Positions 52,471-56,630 of a stretch of DNA of 64,000 nucleotides are shown here, one piece after another. Source of the stretch: Diplonema japonicum. Taxonomy: Eukaryota; Protista; Euglenozoa: Diplonemea. Both the position numbers and the translations under genes were made by a program. Under the pieces are notes generated by a model that did not search any database, was not told the origin of the DNA, and saw only the letters and a list, made by a program, of their open reading frames with translations. How positions within the stretch are numbered: position 1 is the first letter of the stretch; every line of letters begins with the position of its first letter. The stretch spans positions 434,001 through 498,000 of the forward strand of contig OZ025656.1 in the NCBI GenBank assembly GCA_964019335.1, given 5' to 3'.

Positions 52471-53009
52471 ATGTTGCTGAGAAGTGTTCGGTGGAACACA
52501 TACCGAAGATGGGCCTCAAGCGGAGCTGTTGAGTACCTGAAGGAGTTGGCTAAGGAAGCAACCCATTTGTCGAAGAAGCTTGAAGAAGGTGATGACACGC
52601 AGGACACCAGGCTGCGGTACAAGAGGATGCAGATGTACTATGATCAGGGTTTGGCGTATTCAAGTCTTCAAAGCGAGGAGCAAGGACTGATGGAGATGCT
52701 GGAAGAAGGGGACAAAGAGCTGATGGAGCTGGCGGAGGACGATCTGAAAGGAGTGCGGGACATGATGAGGGAAGTGGAGAACTCATTCGACGGAGTACTG
52801 GAGATGGTAGATGATGAAGACAAGGCAGATGTGACGTTGGAGCTGAGCGGGGGCGCAGGAGGGCAGGAGGCGGATTTGTTCGCGAAGGAACTCTTCGACG
52901 TGTACAAAGACTACTGCAAGAGGATGGGGTGGCGCTGGGAAGACCTTACAGGTGACGTGGGTGACGACAATCTTTCGGAGCACCATTTGGAACGGGTATG
53001 ATTGCCATG

Positions 53010-53064
<55 letters not shown>

Positions 53065-53764
53065 AGACACTGACAGCACGCGTATCAGGGACAGACGTGT
53101 TCAAGTACTTGAAGTGGGAGTCCGGTGTGCATCGTGTACAGCGCATCCCACAGAGCGAGTCTGGGGGTCGGACCCACACGTCGACAGCGGGTGTCAAGGT
53201 CTTGCCCACTTTCGAGCCGGATGATATAACGGTGAGCTTTCCACGTGAAGACTTTAAATTCACAAGTTCACGCAACACCGGTCCCGGTGGGCAGAGTGTC
53301 AACAGCACGAACACCCTTGCGATCTGGAAGCACATCCCGACAGGAATGGTCATGAAGGAAGGCAGCGGGAGGGACTTGCAAAACAACGCTGCTCTGGGAT
53401 GGGACAAACTGATCGGAAGGCTGTGGGAGTTGGAGAAGGAAGCAGTATGCTAAACAAAGGGGGGAAAAAAGAAAGAACCAAACAGGCTATCTCGAAGAAG
53501 GAGAACACGCGGTCATCTCTCGCCTTCAGTCTTGACAGGCACAACAAAATCAGGACCTACAACTGGTCCAGACAGAATATCGTGGACCACAGGCTTCCCA
53601 ACACTCAAAACACTGTAATGTTGGACGAATTCTATGAAGGGTCAGATCTCGATTTGCTGATCGAGCGGCTGCAGGCACAAGATGTGGCCACCAGACGAGA
53701 CGGGTGGCTCAAGGAAAAGGCTGCTGAGCTTCGAACCCCTCCAGTGACAAACCAGAAAAAATAA
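52471..53764 (+). CDS. Mitochondrial-type (bacterial class I) peptide chain release factor 1 (3 exons)
   Basis: Presequence-like MLLRSVRW; GAGGQEA, ESGVHRVQRIP, HTSTA, GPGGQSVN, KIRTYNW...DHR. Confidence 0.9.
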
Positions 53765-53881
53765 TCATTATTATTGACGTACGATGTCCCCCCCTTTTTT
53801 TTCTTCTTCTTGCTCTACATACGGAAAAGCATCAAAGAGAGGGGAAGGGGGACAAAAGGAGACGAAGGGAGAAAAAAAAAG

Positions 53882-55936
53882 ATGAAGTTCGGACAACAAC
53901 TGCTGAGTGAGTTCAATTTAGAGTGGGGTCTCGACGCCTACGTTGGTTATAAGAGCCTGAAGGAGCTTCTGAAAGATATCAAGGTTTTATAGGGAAGAAG
54001 AAAAAAAGAAGAGGAAAAAAAAAAAAAAAAAACAGGCGAAGAAAACAGATGTGGAGATCTTCTTTAAATCGATACAAGAGGATCTGCAGATGGTGAACTT
54101 GTTTTTCAAAAACCAAGAGACGACGCTGTACGACTCAACGAGGGTTCTGAGAGACACCTCTCAAGAGAAGGTCTCGAAGAAGGACGTGTTCGAGTGTTAC
54201 AACCAGGCCAAGGCGATCCATAGGTACCAGGACCTCAACAAACTCTGTTTCGAGAAAATTATCAAGAAGTTTTTGAAACGAATGGGTCTACGACAGAGAA
54301 AGAAGGACGAAGAGGCTCAGGTAGAGGAGCCCCCAATGTTCTCCAAGAAGCAAGAAACCGAGCTCAGACTCCGCTGCGACGAATTCTTAGAAACCGTGGA
54401 AGACTCTTACTTCCAGAACCCCGAGAAGGTAGATCTTGCGAAGACCATGCAGGACATGGAAGTATGTATCCTCACGCCCCTTCTCATGTCCACACAGATC
54501 GTGTACTCTGAGAGCTTTGCAAACGGCGACGAAATTCTGTCTCAGGATGTTTTGGAGAAGGTCTGGTCGATGGACCACAGGTCGCAGTCCCGTATCATCG
54601 ACTACACTGACGCGCACTACTACAAAGAAAAGCTTAGGAAGCGGGAGGTGTGGAAGGGGATAAAATAAAATAAAATAAAAATACAGCAACATTACGCGTG
54701 CAGAATCCTCTGCGGCAGTACCAACCGATCCCTCGCCAGGAACGTTTCGAGGTGTCTCGGGCACAAGTCCCTCTGCAACGCGAGGGTCGCTACCTTCGCA
54801 AACGGCGAGTGCAACCTCCAGGTTCTTGACAATGTATGGTGATCGAAACGGGGAATATCAAAAAGATCTTTCACCACAGATCCGAGGCGACGACGTCTTC
54901 CTGTTCCAGTCTGCATCCTTCACAGACGAAGTGAGCCTTGCTCATGCGCAGATGGAGCTTCTCCTCTTGGTGCACACCTGCAGGCTTGCCAGCGCTGCAC
55001 GTATCACTGCTGTTATGCCGTACATGGCGTACCAGTCGAAGAAGCAACCGATGAGCGCGTTTGCGCAGATGATCACGAAGATGGGTGTTGATAGGATACT
55101 GACGGTGGACATGCTGTCTGGGCAGATCCAGGGCTACTTCGAGTCGACCCCATTGGACAACGTGAAGGTGCTGATGGAGTTTGTGAAATATTTCAGAGAG
55201 AAGTTCGACAACAAGGTGGAAGACTACGCGTCACAGGTGTGCATCGTGTCGCCACGCTCGACGGCGGTGGACAGGGCAAAAGAGTTCGCGGACGAACTGG
55301 GGTGCGGGCTGGCAACAGTAATCAGACGAAGGAAGGAAGAAGAAGAGGAAGAGAACAAACTGTCATGGAAGTTCAAGGAGGTAAGTGAGATCGTAGGCGA
55401 TGTTAAAGGGAAGATCTGCATCATCTTAAGCTGCATACTGGATGAGGGTGAGAACATGGCAGGCGTCGCTGAAGAGGTTGTGAGTGCGGGAGCCACCGAG
55501 GTCTACGCCGCGGCCGTGCATGGAGTCTTCGCAGGCCAGGCTGTGGAAAGGCTCGACAATGCGCCCATTGAGGAAGTTGTTGTGACCGACACCATTTGTC
55601 AGGATGATCTCATGTCTTCCTTTGCCAAGCTTCGTGTGATTCCTGTTGCGCCTCTCCTTGCGGAGTGCGTCGACAGGATCCACTCCGAAGCCTCCCTTGG
55701 TGGCATGATGAAGGCCAGGAGAAACTACACCCCTGCGGTTTCTCGTCGTGTTTCAGCCATGCCCACCTCCGAGTCACATGACATTCTGTCCCACCTCGAA
55801 GGCGTGGATCTCACAACCCTCACCAAGCTTCAAACCAGCGATGGCCGACTCTCTCCAGTATGTTTGGAACAAAAAAAGATGAGAAAATAAAACAAAAAAA
55901 ATGTAGATCACTACAAAAAGGGGCGCTTTTAAATAA
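53882..55936 (+). CDS. SPX domain fused to a degenerate PRPP synthetase (~610 aa; introns 53984-54035, 54462-54497, 54648-54686, 54834-54879, 55858-55906)
   Basis: SPX motifs MKFG..EW..YVGYKSLK, FF..I..DL..VNLFF, LNKLCFEKIIKKFLK; PRPS motifs FANGE, IRGDDVFLFQS, SAARITAVMPY, QIQGYF, VGDVKGK, HGVFAG, VVVTDTI; five phase-0 GT-AG introns join them in frame. Confidence 0.88.
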
Positions 55937-56630
55937 ATTATGAGGGGCGGCGGGAGTGGGGAGGGGGGAATCACCCCATCCCCACTTTTTTTGTTTTACT
56001 ACTTTTGGGGGCAGATTACAGACAAAAGATATTACGGAAAAACAAAGGGGTTCATAAAAAACATTTTTTATTTTATTTTTTATTATTACGTGTGTTCCAT
56101 AAAGTAGGAGATGTTTCATTAGAAACAAGAGGAGGAGGAGGGGGAGGATACATGCGAAAAGTATGAGGAAGGTAAAAAGAAAAAAAGAAGAAGAAATTAG
56201 ATAGGAATGCCAACGATAGAAAAATGGAAGAAGGAAGGAAAGACCAGCTGGCCGTGTGTGCTTCCAGTCTGGGTTTCCCATCTCACCCTCCCCCCCTTTC
56301 AGGCTGCACGTTCCGTGTGTCGGTGAAAAGAAATTGCCTTTTTTTTTTTTTCCTTGATCATTTCCCCCCTTTTCCCCCTTAACCCATCCTCTGTTCCCAA
56401 TACCCCCTTGGTGAAGGAGAAATCACAAAAACGAAAGAAAAAAATAAAATTGGAGGGGGGGAGGAAACAACTTGTCGCGCAATATGGGGGGGGGGGGGGG
56501 GGGGGGGGCAACACCCCCCCCCCCCCCCCCCTCCGTCCCGTCTTTCTCTTTCCCCCCTCTTTTTATTTTAATATTTTGTTACACAAACAAAAAATGAAAA
56601 CCTCCCAAAAAGGGAAAAACAAAAAAAGAA

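What the first reader, a model, noticed from the sequence alone, without database searches (positions are those of the whole stretch)
53882..55936. SPX inositol-pyrophosphate sensor fused to a catalytically degenerate PRPP synthetase: candidate phosphate-sensing regulatory subunit of nucleotide synthesis
Seen: the ORF track splits this locus into three pieces, but five phase-0 GT-AG introns join them into one ~610-aa protein. The SPX domain keeps the ligand-binding residues (YKSLK and KIIKKFLK). The PRPS half keeps its fold motifs but has lost the catalytic ones: the YARQD flexible loop is shortened to YMAYQSKKQP, DLH is DML, SPDxGG is SPRSTA, and the ribose-5-P loop DDMxDTxGT is SCILDEGEN. 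Established: SPX domains bind InsP6/PP-InsPs and are known on VTC, PHO transporters, XPR1, Pho81, Gde1 and NLA. Class I PRPS is Pi-activated and forms complexes with non-catalytic homologues (PRPSAP1/2). Inference: a pseudo-enzyme subunit that co-assembles with active PRPS and couples PP-InsP phosphate signalling to PRPP supply. I do not recall this architecture being described, but could not search.
Basis: partly seen in the sequence, partly recalled or inferred. Interest (0 to 1): 0.92.

Follow-up and report, generated by a model that had tools for sequence, protein, structure and literature searches.

The report
SPX-fused dead PRPP synthetase gene
This is a real, expressed six-exon gene of a diplonemid protist that joins a phosphate-signal-sensing SPX domain to a catalytically dead copy of PRPP synthetase, but the same fusion was already described in trypanosomes in 2020, so it is a new member of a known family rather than a new architecture.

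Summary
Window 53882-55936 (+) holds six exons joined by five phase-0 GT..AG introns of 36-52 nt. They encode a 610-aa protein. A transcriptome-derived database protein (P0154) matches the exon translations residue for residue. Spliced contigs from two further runs cross the SPX-to-PRPS junction. The N-terminal 200 residues are an SPX domain that keeps its ligand-binding Tyr/Lys residues. The rest has a class I PRPP-synthetase fold but has lost the catalytic flexible loop, the DLH histidine, the SPDxGG aspartate and the ribose-5-phosphate loop.

The novelty claim does not hold. A 2020 preprint names this fusion TcPRPS4 in Trypanosoma cruzi, recovers it on a 5-IP7 affinity resin, and calls it unique to Kinetoplastida. 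A 2026 preprint lists the kinetoplastid members as PRPS pseudoenzymes without mentioning SPX.

What this work adds:
- The diplonemid genes are orthologues and share the same 8-residue loop deletion.
- The gene is under purifying selection (17 synonymous against 2 non-synonymous differences).
- A euglenid homologue, and a second homologue of unknown source that groups with it, carry SPX on a catalytically intact PRPS.

The idea of a PP-InsP-sensing regulatory subunit is plausible but untested. The scan did not note this gene elsewhere.

The parts
53882..53983 (+). Exon 1 (residues 1-34): start codon and SPX N-terminal helices. Holds the phosphate-binding-cluster residues (MKF..., YVGYKSLK at 53939-53962).
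   Evidence: Identical to P0154 residues 1-34. Pfam SPX profile positions 1-33. Aligns to the Gde1 SPX N-terminus 5ijj.
53984..54035 (+). Intron 1: 52 nt, GT..AG, phase 0, A-rich.
   Evidence: Absent from P0154 and skipped by X1 contig 2. Splice sites.
54036..54461 (+). Exon 2 (residues 35-176): SPX long helices, including the lysine surface cluster EKIIKKFLKR at 54252-54281.
   Evidence: Pfam SPX profile positions 287-333. Aligned to rice SPX2, XPR1 and SYG1 SPX.
54462..54497 (+). Intron 2: 36 nt, GT..AG, phase 0. It has no in-frame stop, so the ORF track reads through it.
   Evidence: Reported as a joint 'skips 36, GT..AG' in X1 and X2. Absent from P0154.
54498..54647 (+). Exon 3 (residues 177-226): the last SPX helices (the SPX fold ends near residue 201, at 54572) and the linker.
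   Evidence: Structural alignment of residues 9-201 to fungal XPR1 SPX.
54648..54686 (+). Intron 3: 39 nt, GT..AG, phase 0.
   Evidence: X1 contig 2 and X2 contig 5 run from 54647 directly into exon 4 (table 8). Absent from P0154.
54687..54833 (+). Exon 4 (residues 227-275): start of the PRPS N-terminal domain, including FANGE (54795-54809).
   Evidence: Pfam Pribosyltran_N profile positions 2-41..
54834..54879 (+). Intron 4: 46 nt, GT..AG, phase 0.
   Evidence: Reported as a joint 'skips 46, GT..AG' in X2..
54880..55857 (+). Exon 5 (residues 276-601): the rest of the PRPS-like fold, carrying the degenerate motifs, followed by most of a roughly 55-residue C-terminal tail. The motifs are the shortened flexible loop (55018-55062), VDML (from 55105), SPRSTA (from 55249), an acidic insert RRRKEEEEEENKLSWKF (55318-55374) and SCILDEGEN (55429-55455).
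   Evidence: Pfam Pribosyl_synth 2.9e-25 and Pribosyltran_N profile positions 45-100. phmmer alignment to human PRPS1. Motif table. Coordinates.
55858..55906 (+). Intron 5: 49 nt, GT..AG, phase 0.
   Evidence: X1 contig 3 joins 55857 to 55907. The loose end of the X2 contig matches the first 17 of its 19 letters to exon 6..
55907..55936 (+). Exon 6 (residues 602-610, ITTKRGAFK) and the TAA stop codon.

Best explanation
Window 53882-55936 (+) is a single expressed nuclear gene of a diplonemid (Euglenozoa). It is the orthologue of the kinetoplastid 'PRPS4' SPX-PRPS protein.

The 610-aa product has four parts:
- an N-terminal SPX domain (residues 1 to about 201) with intact inositol-polyphosphate-binding residues;
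- a short linker;
- a class I PRPP-synthetase fold (about 231-553) that cannot make PRPP;
- a C-terminal tail of about 55 residues.

The PRPS fold lacks 8 residues of the catalytic flexible loop, including Arg-Gln-Asp. It also lacks the Mg/ATP histidine (DLH is DML), the SPDxGG aspartate, both aspartates of the ribose-5-phosphate loop, and that loop's Thr-x-Gly-Thr phosphate grip.

The most likely function is inferred, not shown. The protein would be a non-catalytic subunit that assembles with the organism's catalytic PRPS paralogues, as PRPSAP1/2 do in mammals. It would make the activity or assembly of the complex depend on PP-InsP, and therefore on cellular phosphate status, through its SPX domain.

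The state with a deleted loop is shared by diplonemids and kinetoplastids. A euglenid homologue still has SPX on an intact PRPS. The fusion therefore probably came first and loss of catalysis second.
For: Shown here:
- One gene and one mRNA: exact match to the transcriptome ORF P0154 and spliced contigs across all five introns.
- Diplonemid origin: the best named relative is Diplonema papillatum KAJ9471364.1, 606 aa, 66% identical over the PRPS half. 21 of the 22 ORFs of 300 aa or more in the window lie on the + strand. The intron lengths fit the published diplonemid medians of 41-42 nt.
- SPX: Pfam 40.6 bits against a cut-off of 27.8. Fold match to XPR1 SPX with Z 16.8 and rmsd 1.9 A over 149 residues, and matches to Vtc4, Gde1 and rice SPX1. 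The Tyr and Lys cluster residues are kept.
- PRPS fold: AF2 pLDDT 91.2 and pTM 0.89. TM 0.87-0.92 to human and E. coli PRPS. Z 37.8 and rmsd 1.5 A to human PAP39.
- Loss of catalytic motifs, shared by 9 diplonemid and about 16 kinetoplastid-type sequences.
- These degenerate sequences form one clade with SH-aLRT 99.
- Purifying selection: 17 synonymous against 2 non-synonymous differences from close strains.
- Possible partners: loci L001 and L002 in the same genome carry complete catalytic motif sets.

From papers:
- TcPRPS4 was enriched on a 5-IP7 resin (10.1101/2020.01.09.900860).
- Kinetoplastid members are listed as pseudoenzymes, and PRPS pseudoenzymes in general keep their subunit interfaces (PMC13252144).
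- Human PRPS1/2 and PRPSAP1/2 were recovered with an InsP7 bait (cited in PMC8644344).
Against: - No experiment on any member shows association with a catalytic PRPS, an effect of InsP/PP-InsP on PRPP synthesis, or lack of activity. The 2020 preprint treats TcPRPS4 as an enzyme.
- I did not test whether the subunit interfaces are conserved in this protein.
- Some ligand-site residues survive: FANGE, the Arg of IRG, the aspartate of the DML motif, one Asp of the ribose-5-phosphate loop, and Arg at the Lys194 and Arg196 positions. Nucleotide binding or an altered chemistry therefore cannot be excluded.
- Kinetoplastid SPX domains have lost one lysine of the surface cluster, so ligand affinity may differ between lineages.
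- The tree does not resolve the intact SPX-PRPS pair as sister to the degenerate clade. A single origin is only 'not rejected' (AU p 0.37).
Confidence: 0.6

Rival explanations
1. It is an active PRPP synthetase whose activity is controlled in cis by its own SPX domain. This is what the 2020 preprint assumed for TcPRPS4.
For: - It is annotated 'ribose-phosphate pyrophosphokinase' in D. papillatum and Trypanosoma.
- The 2020 preprint assigns it EC 2.7.6.1.
- Homologues with SPX plus fully intact motifs exist (P0160 and P0161), so this mode is plausible for those proteins.
- The FANGE nucleotide-binding stretch is kept.
Against: - The 8-residue deletion removes Arg-Gln-Asp of the catalytic flexible loop.
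- His130 becomes Leu, Asp171 becomes Arg, and Asp220/Asp221 become Ser/Cys.
- The Thr-x-Gly-Thr that holds the 5-phosphate of ribose-5-phosphate becomes Glu-Gly-Glu-Asn, which puts acidic residues where a phosphate should bind.
- PMC13252144 classes the kinetoplastid members as pseudoenzymes.
Confidence: 0.08
2. It is a pseudoenzyme, but it works outside the PRPS complex. For example, the PRPS-like fold could serve as a nucleotide or phosphometabolite sensor, or as a self-assembling scaffold. The SPX domain could then recruit or regulate other partners, as stand-alone plant SPX proteins do with PHR.
For: - SPX domains often act by binding partner proteins, as in the rice SPX1-PHR2 structure 7e40, which is among the fold matches.
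- The high pTM of 0.89 suggests that SPX packs on its own PRPS-like domain.
- The substituted 'active-site' residues are themselves conserved within the clade, for example the D-E pair in the former ribose-5-phosphate loop.
- There is a conserved lineage-specific C-terminal tail.
Against: - Every PRPS pseudoenzyme characterised so far acts within PRPS complexes (PMC12238573 and PMC13252144, as summarised).
- The core fold matches PAP39 at 1.5 A.
- Catalytic paralogues of the same subclass co-occur in the genome.
Confidence: 0.25
3. It is two neighbouring genes, an SPX protein and a PRPS-like protein, separated by spliced-leader trans-splicing at 54687 or 54880. Alternatively, it is a decaying pseudogene.
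For: - The organism belongs to a phylum that uses polycistronic transcription and spliced-leader trans-splicing.
- The mechanical ORF list splits the locus.
- The X2 contig has a 2-nt deletion at 55237.
Against: - Single contigs in two runs span exons 1-4 and exons 2-5 with precise GT..AG removal.
- A complete 610-aa ORF was assembled from RNA.
- The same fused architecture is found in at least 7 diplonemid and many kinetoplastid proteins.
- The ratio of 17 synonymous to 2 non-synonymous differences argues against decay.
Confidence: 0.02

Closest known systems
TcPRPS4 and kinetoplastid SPX-PRPS (Trypanosoma cruzi TcCLB.507809.30; bioRxiv 10.1101/2020.01.09.900860)
   Same: - N-terminal SPX and C-terminal PRPS-like region on one polypeptide.
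- Same 8-residue deletion of the catalytic flexible loop and loss of the DTxGT phosphate grip.
- One well-supported clade with the trypanosome sequences (SH-aLRT 99).
   Different: - Only about 30% identical.
- The diplonemid protein lacks the long low-complexity insert that kinetoplastids carry after the KRR position.
- It starts with the canonical MKFG and keeps all four lysines of K-x-x-K-K-x-x-K, where kinetoplastids have ...KKFxE.
- Its gene has five introns.
- The paper calls the family unique to Kinetoplastida and treats it as an enzyme.
PRPSAP1/2 (PAP39/PAP41), the non-catalytic subunits of the mammalian PRPS complex
   Same: - PRPS fold with degenerate catalytic residues. The fold match to PAP39 (2c4k) has Z 37.8 and rmsd 1.5 A.
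- An insertion at the same place, after the KRR position.
- Co-exists with catalytic paralogues.
   Different: - Independent origin: the sequence is closer to catalytic PRPS1 (E 1.8e-43) than to PRPSAP2 (2e-32), and it nests among euglenozoan PRPS.
- PRPSAPs have no SPX or other sensor domain.
- Association with catalytic subunits is shown for PRPSAP and not for this protein.
SPX fused to catalytically intact PRPS (P0161 of the euglenid Rhabdomonas costata; P0160, source unknown)
   Same: - N-terminal SPX above the Pfam cut-off (40-43 bits) followed directly by a PRPS of the same eukaryotic group.
- A single clade of all SPX-bearing PRPS is not rejected (AU p 0.37).
   Different: All catalytic motifs are intact (SRQDRKT, DLH, SPDAGG, KRR, DDxIDTAGT), so these are probably real enzymes regulated in cis. 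They are about 36% identical to the diplonemid protein.
Vtc4 (SPX fused to the polyphosphate polymerase domain) and other SPX-effector fusions (XPR1, PHO1, Pho91, Gde1, NLA)
   Same: An N-terminal SPX domain with the same fold and ligand-binding residues, fused to an effector involved in phosphate economy. It works like them in the sense of 'SPX sensor plus output module'.
   Different: The output module here is a dead enzyme of nucleotide-precursor synthesis, so any output must go through protein-protein contacts rather than through the module's own catalysis or transport.

Membership tests
SPX domain (Pfam PF03105) | Profile score above the curated gathering threshold | tested here: met
   P0154 scores 40.6 bits against a cut-off of 27.8. 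Exons 1 and 2 each hit SPX on their own.
SPX domain (Pfam PF03105) | SPX helical fold (N-terminal hairpin plus long helices) | tested here: met
   AF2 model residues 3-201 against XPR1 SPX 8tyu give Z 16.8 and rmsd 1.9 A over 149 residues. Vtc4 5iiq/5ijp, Gde1 5ijj and rice SPX1 7e40 give Z 12-15. The top values are above the tool's caution line of about 13 for helical bundles.
SPX domain (Pfam PF03105) | Phosphate-binding cluster (Lys2, Tyr22, Lys26) and lysine surface cluster (K-x-x-K-K-x-x-K) | tested here: met
   MKFG..., YVGYKSLK and EKIIKKFLKR align with the corresponding stretches of Gde1, rice SPX2, XPR1 and SYG1. The residue numbering comes from my knowledge of Wild et al. 2016.
SPX domain (Pfam PF03105) | Binds InsP6 / PP-InsP | not testable with these tools
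   Indirect only: the T. cruzi orthologue was enriched on a 5-IP7 resin (10.1101/2020.01.09.900860).
Class I PRPP synthetase, as an active enzyme (EC 2.7.6.1) | Two-domain PRPS fold | tested here: met
   Foldseek TM 0.87-0.92 to human PRPS1 and E. coli PRPS. Z 38.4 to 7pn0. Pfam Pribosyltran_N and Pribosyl_synth.
Class I PRPP synthetase, as an active enzyme (EC 2.7.6.1) | Catalytic flexible loop with Arg-Gln-Asp-(Arg/Lys)-Lys | tested here: not met
   The sequence is PYMAYQSKKQ--------PMSAF against PYFAYARQDRKTKPRVPISASCV. There is an 8-residue deletion and no RQD.
Class I PRPP synthetase, as an active enzyme (EC 2.7.6.1) | DLH histidine (His130 in human PRPS1) and SPDxGG aspartate (Asp171) | tested here: not met
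   The motifs read VDML and SPRSTA.
Class I PRPP synthetase, as an active enzyme (EC 2.7.6.1) | Ribose-5-phosphate loop DDxxDTxGT | tested here: not met
   The loop reads SCILDEGEN. Only the third Asp is kept.
Kinetoplastid-type SPX-PRPS ('PRPS4') | SPX and PRPS-like region on one polypeptide | tested here: met
Kinetoplastid-type SPX-PRPS ('PRPS4') | Common descent with the trypanosomatid members | tested here: met
   A clade of 23 degenerate sequences, including Trypanosoma brucei gambiense, T. grayi and T. melophagium, has SH-aLRT 99 on a quick tree. They share the 8-residue deletion.
PRPSAP-type non-catalytic PRPS subunit | Physical association with catalytic PRPS subunits | not testable with these tools
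   No multimer prediction and no interaction data were available.
PRPSAP-type non-catalytic PRPS subunit | Orthology with metazoan PRPSAP1/2 | tested here: not met
   phmmer scores are better to catalytic PRPS1 than to PRPSAP1/2. The protein nests within euglenozoan PRPS. PRPSAP itself was not in the tree. The resemblance is in mode of action only.

The most novel reading that the evidence does not exclude
SPX-pseudoPRPS would be a PP-InsP-gated regulatory subunit of the PRPS hexamer or filament, conserved across diplonemids and kinetoplastids. It would derive from an SPX-fused active PRPS that still exists in euglenids. That would make it the first case in which the eukaryotic phosphate-status signal is wired directly into nucleotide-precursor synthesis through a dead-enzyme adaptor. 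It would also give a natural three-step series: plain enzyme, SPX-enzyme, SPX-pseudoenzyme.
Probability: 0.4. Interest if true: 0.7.

Novelty: new member of a known kind. Interest (0 to 1): 0.45.

Why it matters
PRPP synthesis is activated by phosphate and sits at the entry to nucleotide synthesis. How cells match it to phosphate supply is only partly understood.

An SPX-bearing dead PRPS subunit would be a direct link between PP-InsP signalling and PRPP supply. That link can be tested in genetically tractable organisms (Diplonema papillatum, Trypanosoma brucei).

This report corrects two published statements. The family is not restricted to Kinetoplastida. Its members with the deleted loop are very unlikely to be enzymes.

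It also points to a euglenid version with an intact active site as a comparison point.

Tried and rejected
I searched the exons by reference. For whole-protein work I used P0154, a database protein identical to the exon translations.
- Rfam on the whole window found nothing.
- Paper search for 'SPX domain' plus 'PRPP synthetase' gave 0 hits. The relevant preprint appeared only with the term 'ribose-phosphate pyrophosphokinase'.
- The search for homologous proteins with the SPX part of P0161 (residues 1-215) found only the query itself. The spread of intact SPX-PRPS beyond P0160 and P0161 is therefore unknown.
- Ten other long PRPS-like proteins from the representative search carry no SPX at E <= 0.01. 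One carries an NTP-transferase domain instead.
- The tree did not resolve where the intact SPX-PRPS pair sits. The AU test neither supports nor rejects a single origin.
- No spliced-leader evidence could be obtained. All runs are kept as contigs, and the X1 contig starts 10 nt upstream of the ATG.
I could not examine how SPX packs on the PRPS-like domain, or whether the interfaces are conserved.
Full report
**1. The observation**

Reading the region and listing ORFs shows three open pieces on the + strand. Translated by reference, the pieces hit Pfam as follows:
- 53882-53983: SPX, profile positions 1-33.
- 54036-54647: SPX, profile positions 287-333.
- 54687-54827: Pribosyltran_N, positions 2-41.
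- 54880-55887: Pribosyltran_N, positions 45-100, plus Pribosyl_synth at 2.9e-25.

The profile positions continue across the proposed splice junctions.

A search of 1.84 billion representatives with the large exon, followed by a word-index search with the best full-length named hit, returned P0154. P0154 is a 610-aa 'complete' ORF from a Trinity transcriptome in EukProt. A k-mer mapping places every one of its 610 residues, with no mismatch, on six window exons:

| Exon | Window coordinates |
|---|---|
| 1 | 53882-53983 |
| 2 | 54036-54461 |
| 3 | 54498-54647 |
| 4 | 54687-54833 |
| 5 | 54880-55857 |
| 6 | 55907-55933, then TAA to 55936 |

The five introns are 52, 36, 39, 46 and 49 nt. All are GT..AG and all are phase 0.

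Wherever a whole protein was needed I used P0154, a database sequence identical to the exon translations.

**2. Transcript evidence for the fusion**

The look-up of sequencing runs gave runs that carry the full stretch (X3-X8, one organism, library type not on record). It also gave two runs, guessed to be RNA, from closely related labelled organisms (X1, X2). Laid on 53700-56100, they show:
- X1 contig 2 covers exon 1, exon 2, exon 3 and the start of exon 4.
- X2 contig 5 covers exons 2, 3, 4 and 5, and ends in a 19-letter loose tail. The first 17 letters are the start of exon 6. The last two differ.
- The joints at 54461/54498 and 54833/54880 are reported as GT..AG skips.
- The joints at 53983/54036 and 54647/54687 are visible in the piece table. 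The tool masked a few repeat letters there.
- The contigs of X3 and X7 carry the introns.

The result favours one mRNA. A spliced leader could not be seen because only contigs are kept.

**3. What organism this is**

- The best named relative is 'ribose-phosphate pyrophosphokinase' KAJ9471364.1 of Diplonema papillatum: 606 aa, 66% identical over the PRPS half, with SPX.
- A Hemistasia-labelled sequence is also close.
- 21 of the 22 ORFs of 300 aa or more in the window are on the + strand. This fits euglenozoan polycistronic arrays.
- Introns of about 40 nt match the medians of 41-42 nt published for Diplonema japonicum and Sulcionema specki (PMC12621601).

The window is therefore from a diplonemid that is not D. 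papillatum. I did not try to name the species.

**4. The two domains**

On P0154, Pfam gives SPX 40.6 bits (cut-off 27.8), Pribosyltran_N 84.9 bits and Pribosyl_synth 87.2 bits. An AlphaFold2 model built on a 72-sequence alignment (A1) has mean pLDDT 91.2 and pTM 0.89.

Fold matches against solved structures:
- Residues 229-560 match PRPS with Z 38.4 (7pn0). They match human PAP39 with Z 37.8 and rmsd 1.5 A (2c4k).
- Residues 3-201 match the XPR1 SPX domain with Z 16.8 and rmsd 1.9 A over 149 residues (8tyu). They also match Vtc4, Gde1, rice SPX1 and PHO1;H1 SPX domains.

Foldseek gives TM 0.87-0.92 to human PRPS1 and E. coli PRPS.

The SPX ligand residues are in place. MKF... and YVGYKSLK give the Lys2, Tyr22 and Lys26 equivalents. 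EKIIKKFLKR gives the lysine surface cluster.

**5. Catalytic degeneracy**

The phmmer alignment to human PRPS1 and a family alignment show the following:

| Canonical feature | This protein |
|---|---|
| Flexible loop PYFAYARQDRKTKPRVPISA | PYMAYQSKKQ--------PMSA (8 residues deleted, Arg-Gln-Asp gone) |
| DLH | DML |
| SPDAGG | SPRSTA |
| DDxxDTxGT | SCILDEGEN |
| Lys194 position | Arg |

The fold elements, FANGE, IRGDD, QIQGYF, the HG of canonical ATHG (AVHG here) and the C-terminal helix are kept. These are the residues established for ATP/Mg binding, ribose-5-phosphate binding and catalysis in class I PRPS. That assignment rests on my knowledge of the B. subtilis and human PRPS1 structures. 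Loss of activity is a strong inference, but it has not been measured.

**6. The degeneracy is old and maintained**

All nine diplonemid sequences share the loop deletion and the loss of the DTxGT grip. So do all kinetoplastid-type sequences, including Trypanosoma brucei gambiense, T. grayi and T. melophagium.

P0010 shares the 33 N-terminal residues printed with Angomonas EPY24133.1 as shown in the preprint's table.

On a maximum-likelihood tree of the PRPS region:
- The 23 degenerate sequences form a clade with SH-aLRT 99.
- The diplonemid subclade has SH-aLRT 99.
- The kinetoplastid-type subclade has SH-aLRT 98.

The window and the X1/X2 transcripts differ at 19 exonic sites. Of these, 17 are synonymous and 2 are not. 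So both halves are under purifying selection.

The same genome has six PRPS-like loci. L001 and L002 carry complete catalytic motif sets.

**7. An intact SPX-PRPS exists**

P0160 (554 aa) and P0161 (538 aa) carry SPX at 42.7 and 40.4 bits, a full-length Pribosyltran_N match, and every catalytic motif. P0161's identifier is 'RCo042996'. That format is used in the Rhabdomonas costata genome paper PMC8219788, so P0161 is most likely from that euglenid.

The two sequences form their own clade (SH-aLRT 99) in an unresolved region of the tree. Forcing all 25 SPX-bearing sequences into one clade costs 1.6 log-likelihood units (AU p 0.37). A single fusion event followed by inactivation in the common ancestor of diplonemids and kinetoplastids is therefore compatible with the data. 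It is not demonstrated.

**8. What is already known**

[quoted passage not shown] It was enriched on an immobilised 5-IP7 analogue from T. cruzi lysates. The preprint calls it conserved in and unique to Kinetoplastida, including Bodo saltans, and assumes it is an enzyme.
- PMC13252144 catalogues 37 independent PRPS pseudoenzyme events. Its Supplementary Table 4 lists sequences from Angomonas, Bodo, Leishmania and T. congolense whose N-termini are the SPX domain. The word SPX occurs nowhere in the paper or in the supplements as held. The D. papillatum orthologue KAJ9471364.1 appears in the presence table only, not in the held text of the pseudoenzyme table. That file may be truncated.
- An ESM Atlas cluster auto-named 'SPX domain-containing protein' has PF13793, PF14572 and PF03105 and 64 members, mostly Euglenozoa. 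It is the nearest neighbour of P0154 (score 0.93).
- PMC8644344 cites Furkert et al. 2020 for recovery of human PRPS1/2 and PRPSAP1/2 with an InsP7 bait. This is an SPX-independent link between PP-InsP and the PRPS complex.

The architecture is therefore published.

**9. Mechanism**

Shown: one protein, an intact SPX sensor, a dead PRPS fold, purifying selection, and catalytic paralogues in the same genome.

Inferred: the PRPS-like half docks into PRPS oligomers as PRPSAP1/2 do, and SPX occupancy by PP-InsP changes the activity or assembly of the complex. I cannot predict the sign of the effect. Class I PRPS needs phosphate, so positive coupling to phosphate sufficiency is the simplest expectation.

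Rivals:
- A cis-regulated active enzyme. This is unlikely given the residue losses.
- A pseudoenzyme acting outside the PRPS complex. This is not excluded.
- Two genes or a pseudogene. This is refuted.

**10. Verdict**

This is a new member of a known kind: a diplonemid orthologue of kinetoplastid PRPS4.

The remaining value lies in three points:
- The family extends to diplonemids.
- Its members with the deleted loop are very probably pseudoenzymes, not enzymes.
- A euglenid keeps an SPX-fused intact PRPS.

The regulatory-subunit hypothesis is worth a bench test. It is not a new architecture.

Noticed in passing
window 1-64000: 21 of the 22 ORFs of 300 aa or more lie on the + strand. This is a long unidirectional gene array, as expected for euglenozoan polycistronic transcription.
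   Followed up: no
window 52471-53764 (+): The gene immediately upstream is split into three ORF pieces. The piece at 52998-53453 carries a peptide-release-factor-like GGQ motif (NTGPGGQSVN). A long A-run near 53020-53080 reads as poly-Lys and is probably an intron.
   Followed up: no
window 55237: The spliced X2 contig lacks 2 nt here, inside a GTGTG context, relative to the window and to X1. Taken at face value this would shift the frame in that strain. It is more likely a low-depth assembly error (table 4).
   Followed up: no
G000:C79:261910-262434, C79:390448-390636, C63:260272-260367 (L007, L008, L010): Three further SPX-like matches occur in the same genome, two of them inside long open frames of about 600-650 aa. 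Other first-stage notes on this genome mention SPX-CCCH and SPX-MAPK fusions. Diplonemids may have an unusually wide set of SPX fusions.
   Followed up: no
L004 (G000:C26:256043-259411): This PRPS paralogue has SRQDRK and DLH but APDANG instead of SPDxGG, and no match to the ribose-5-phosphate loop pattern. It resembles the SPX-less diplonemid 'subclass 3' pseudoenzyme listed for D. papillatum in PMC13252144. The genome may hold two different kinds of PRPS pseudoenzyme.
   Followed up: partly
P0050 (594 aa): A PRPS with an N-terminal nucleotidyl-transferase domain (NTP_transferase / MobA-like). This is a different PRPS fusion of unknown source.
   Followed up: no
window 53765-53881 and 55937-56630: The intergenic stretches are rich in homopolymer runs (C/T and A/G tracts). 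Contigs of X3 and X7 break or diverge here (loose ends at 53806-53812 and 53886). The pyrimidine tract upstream of the ATG is a plausible spliced-leader acceptor region.
   Followed up: no
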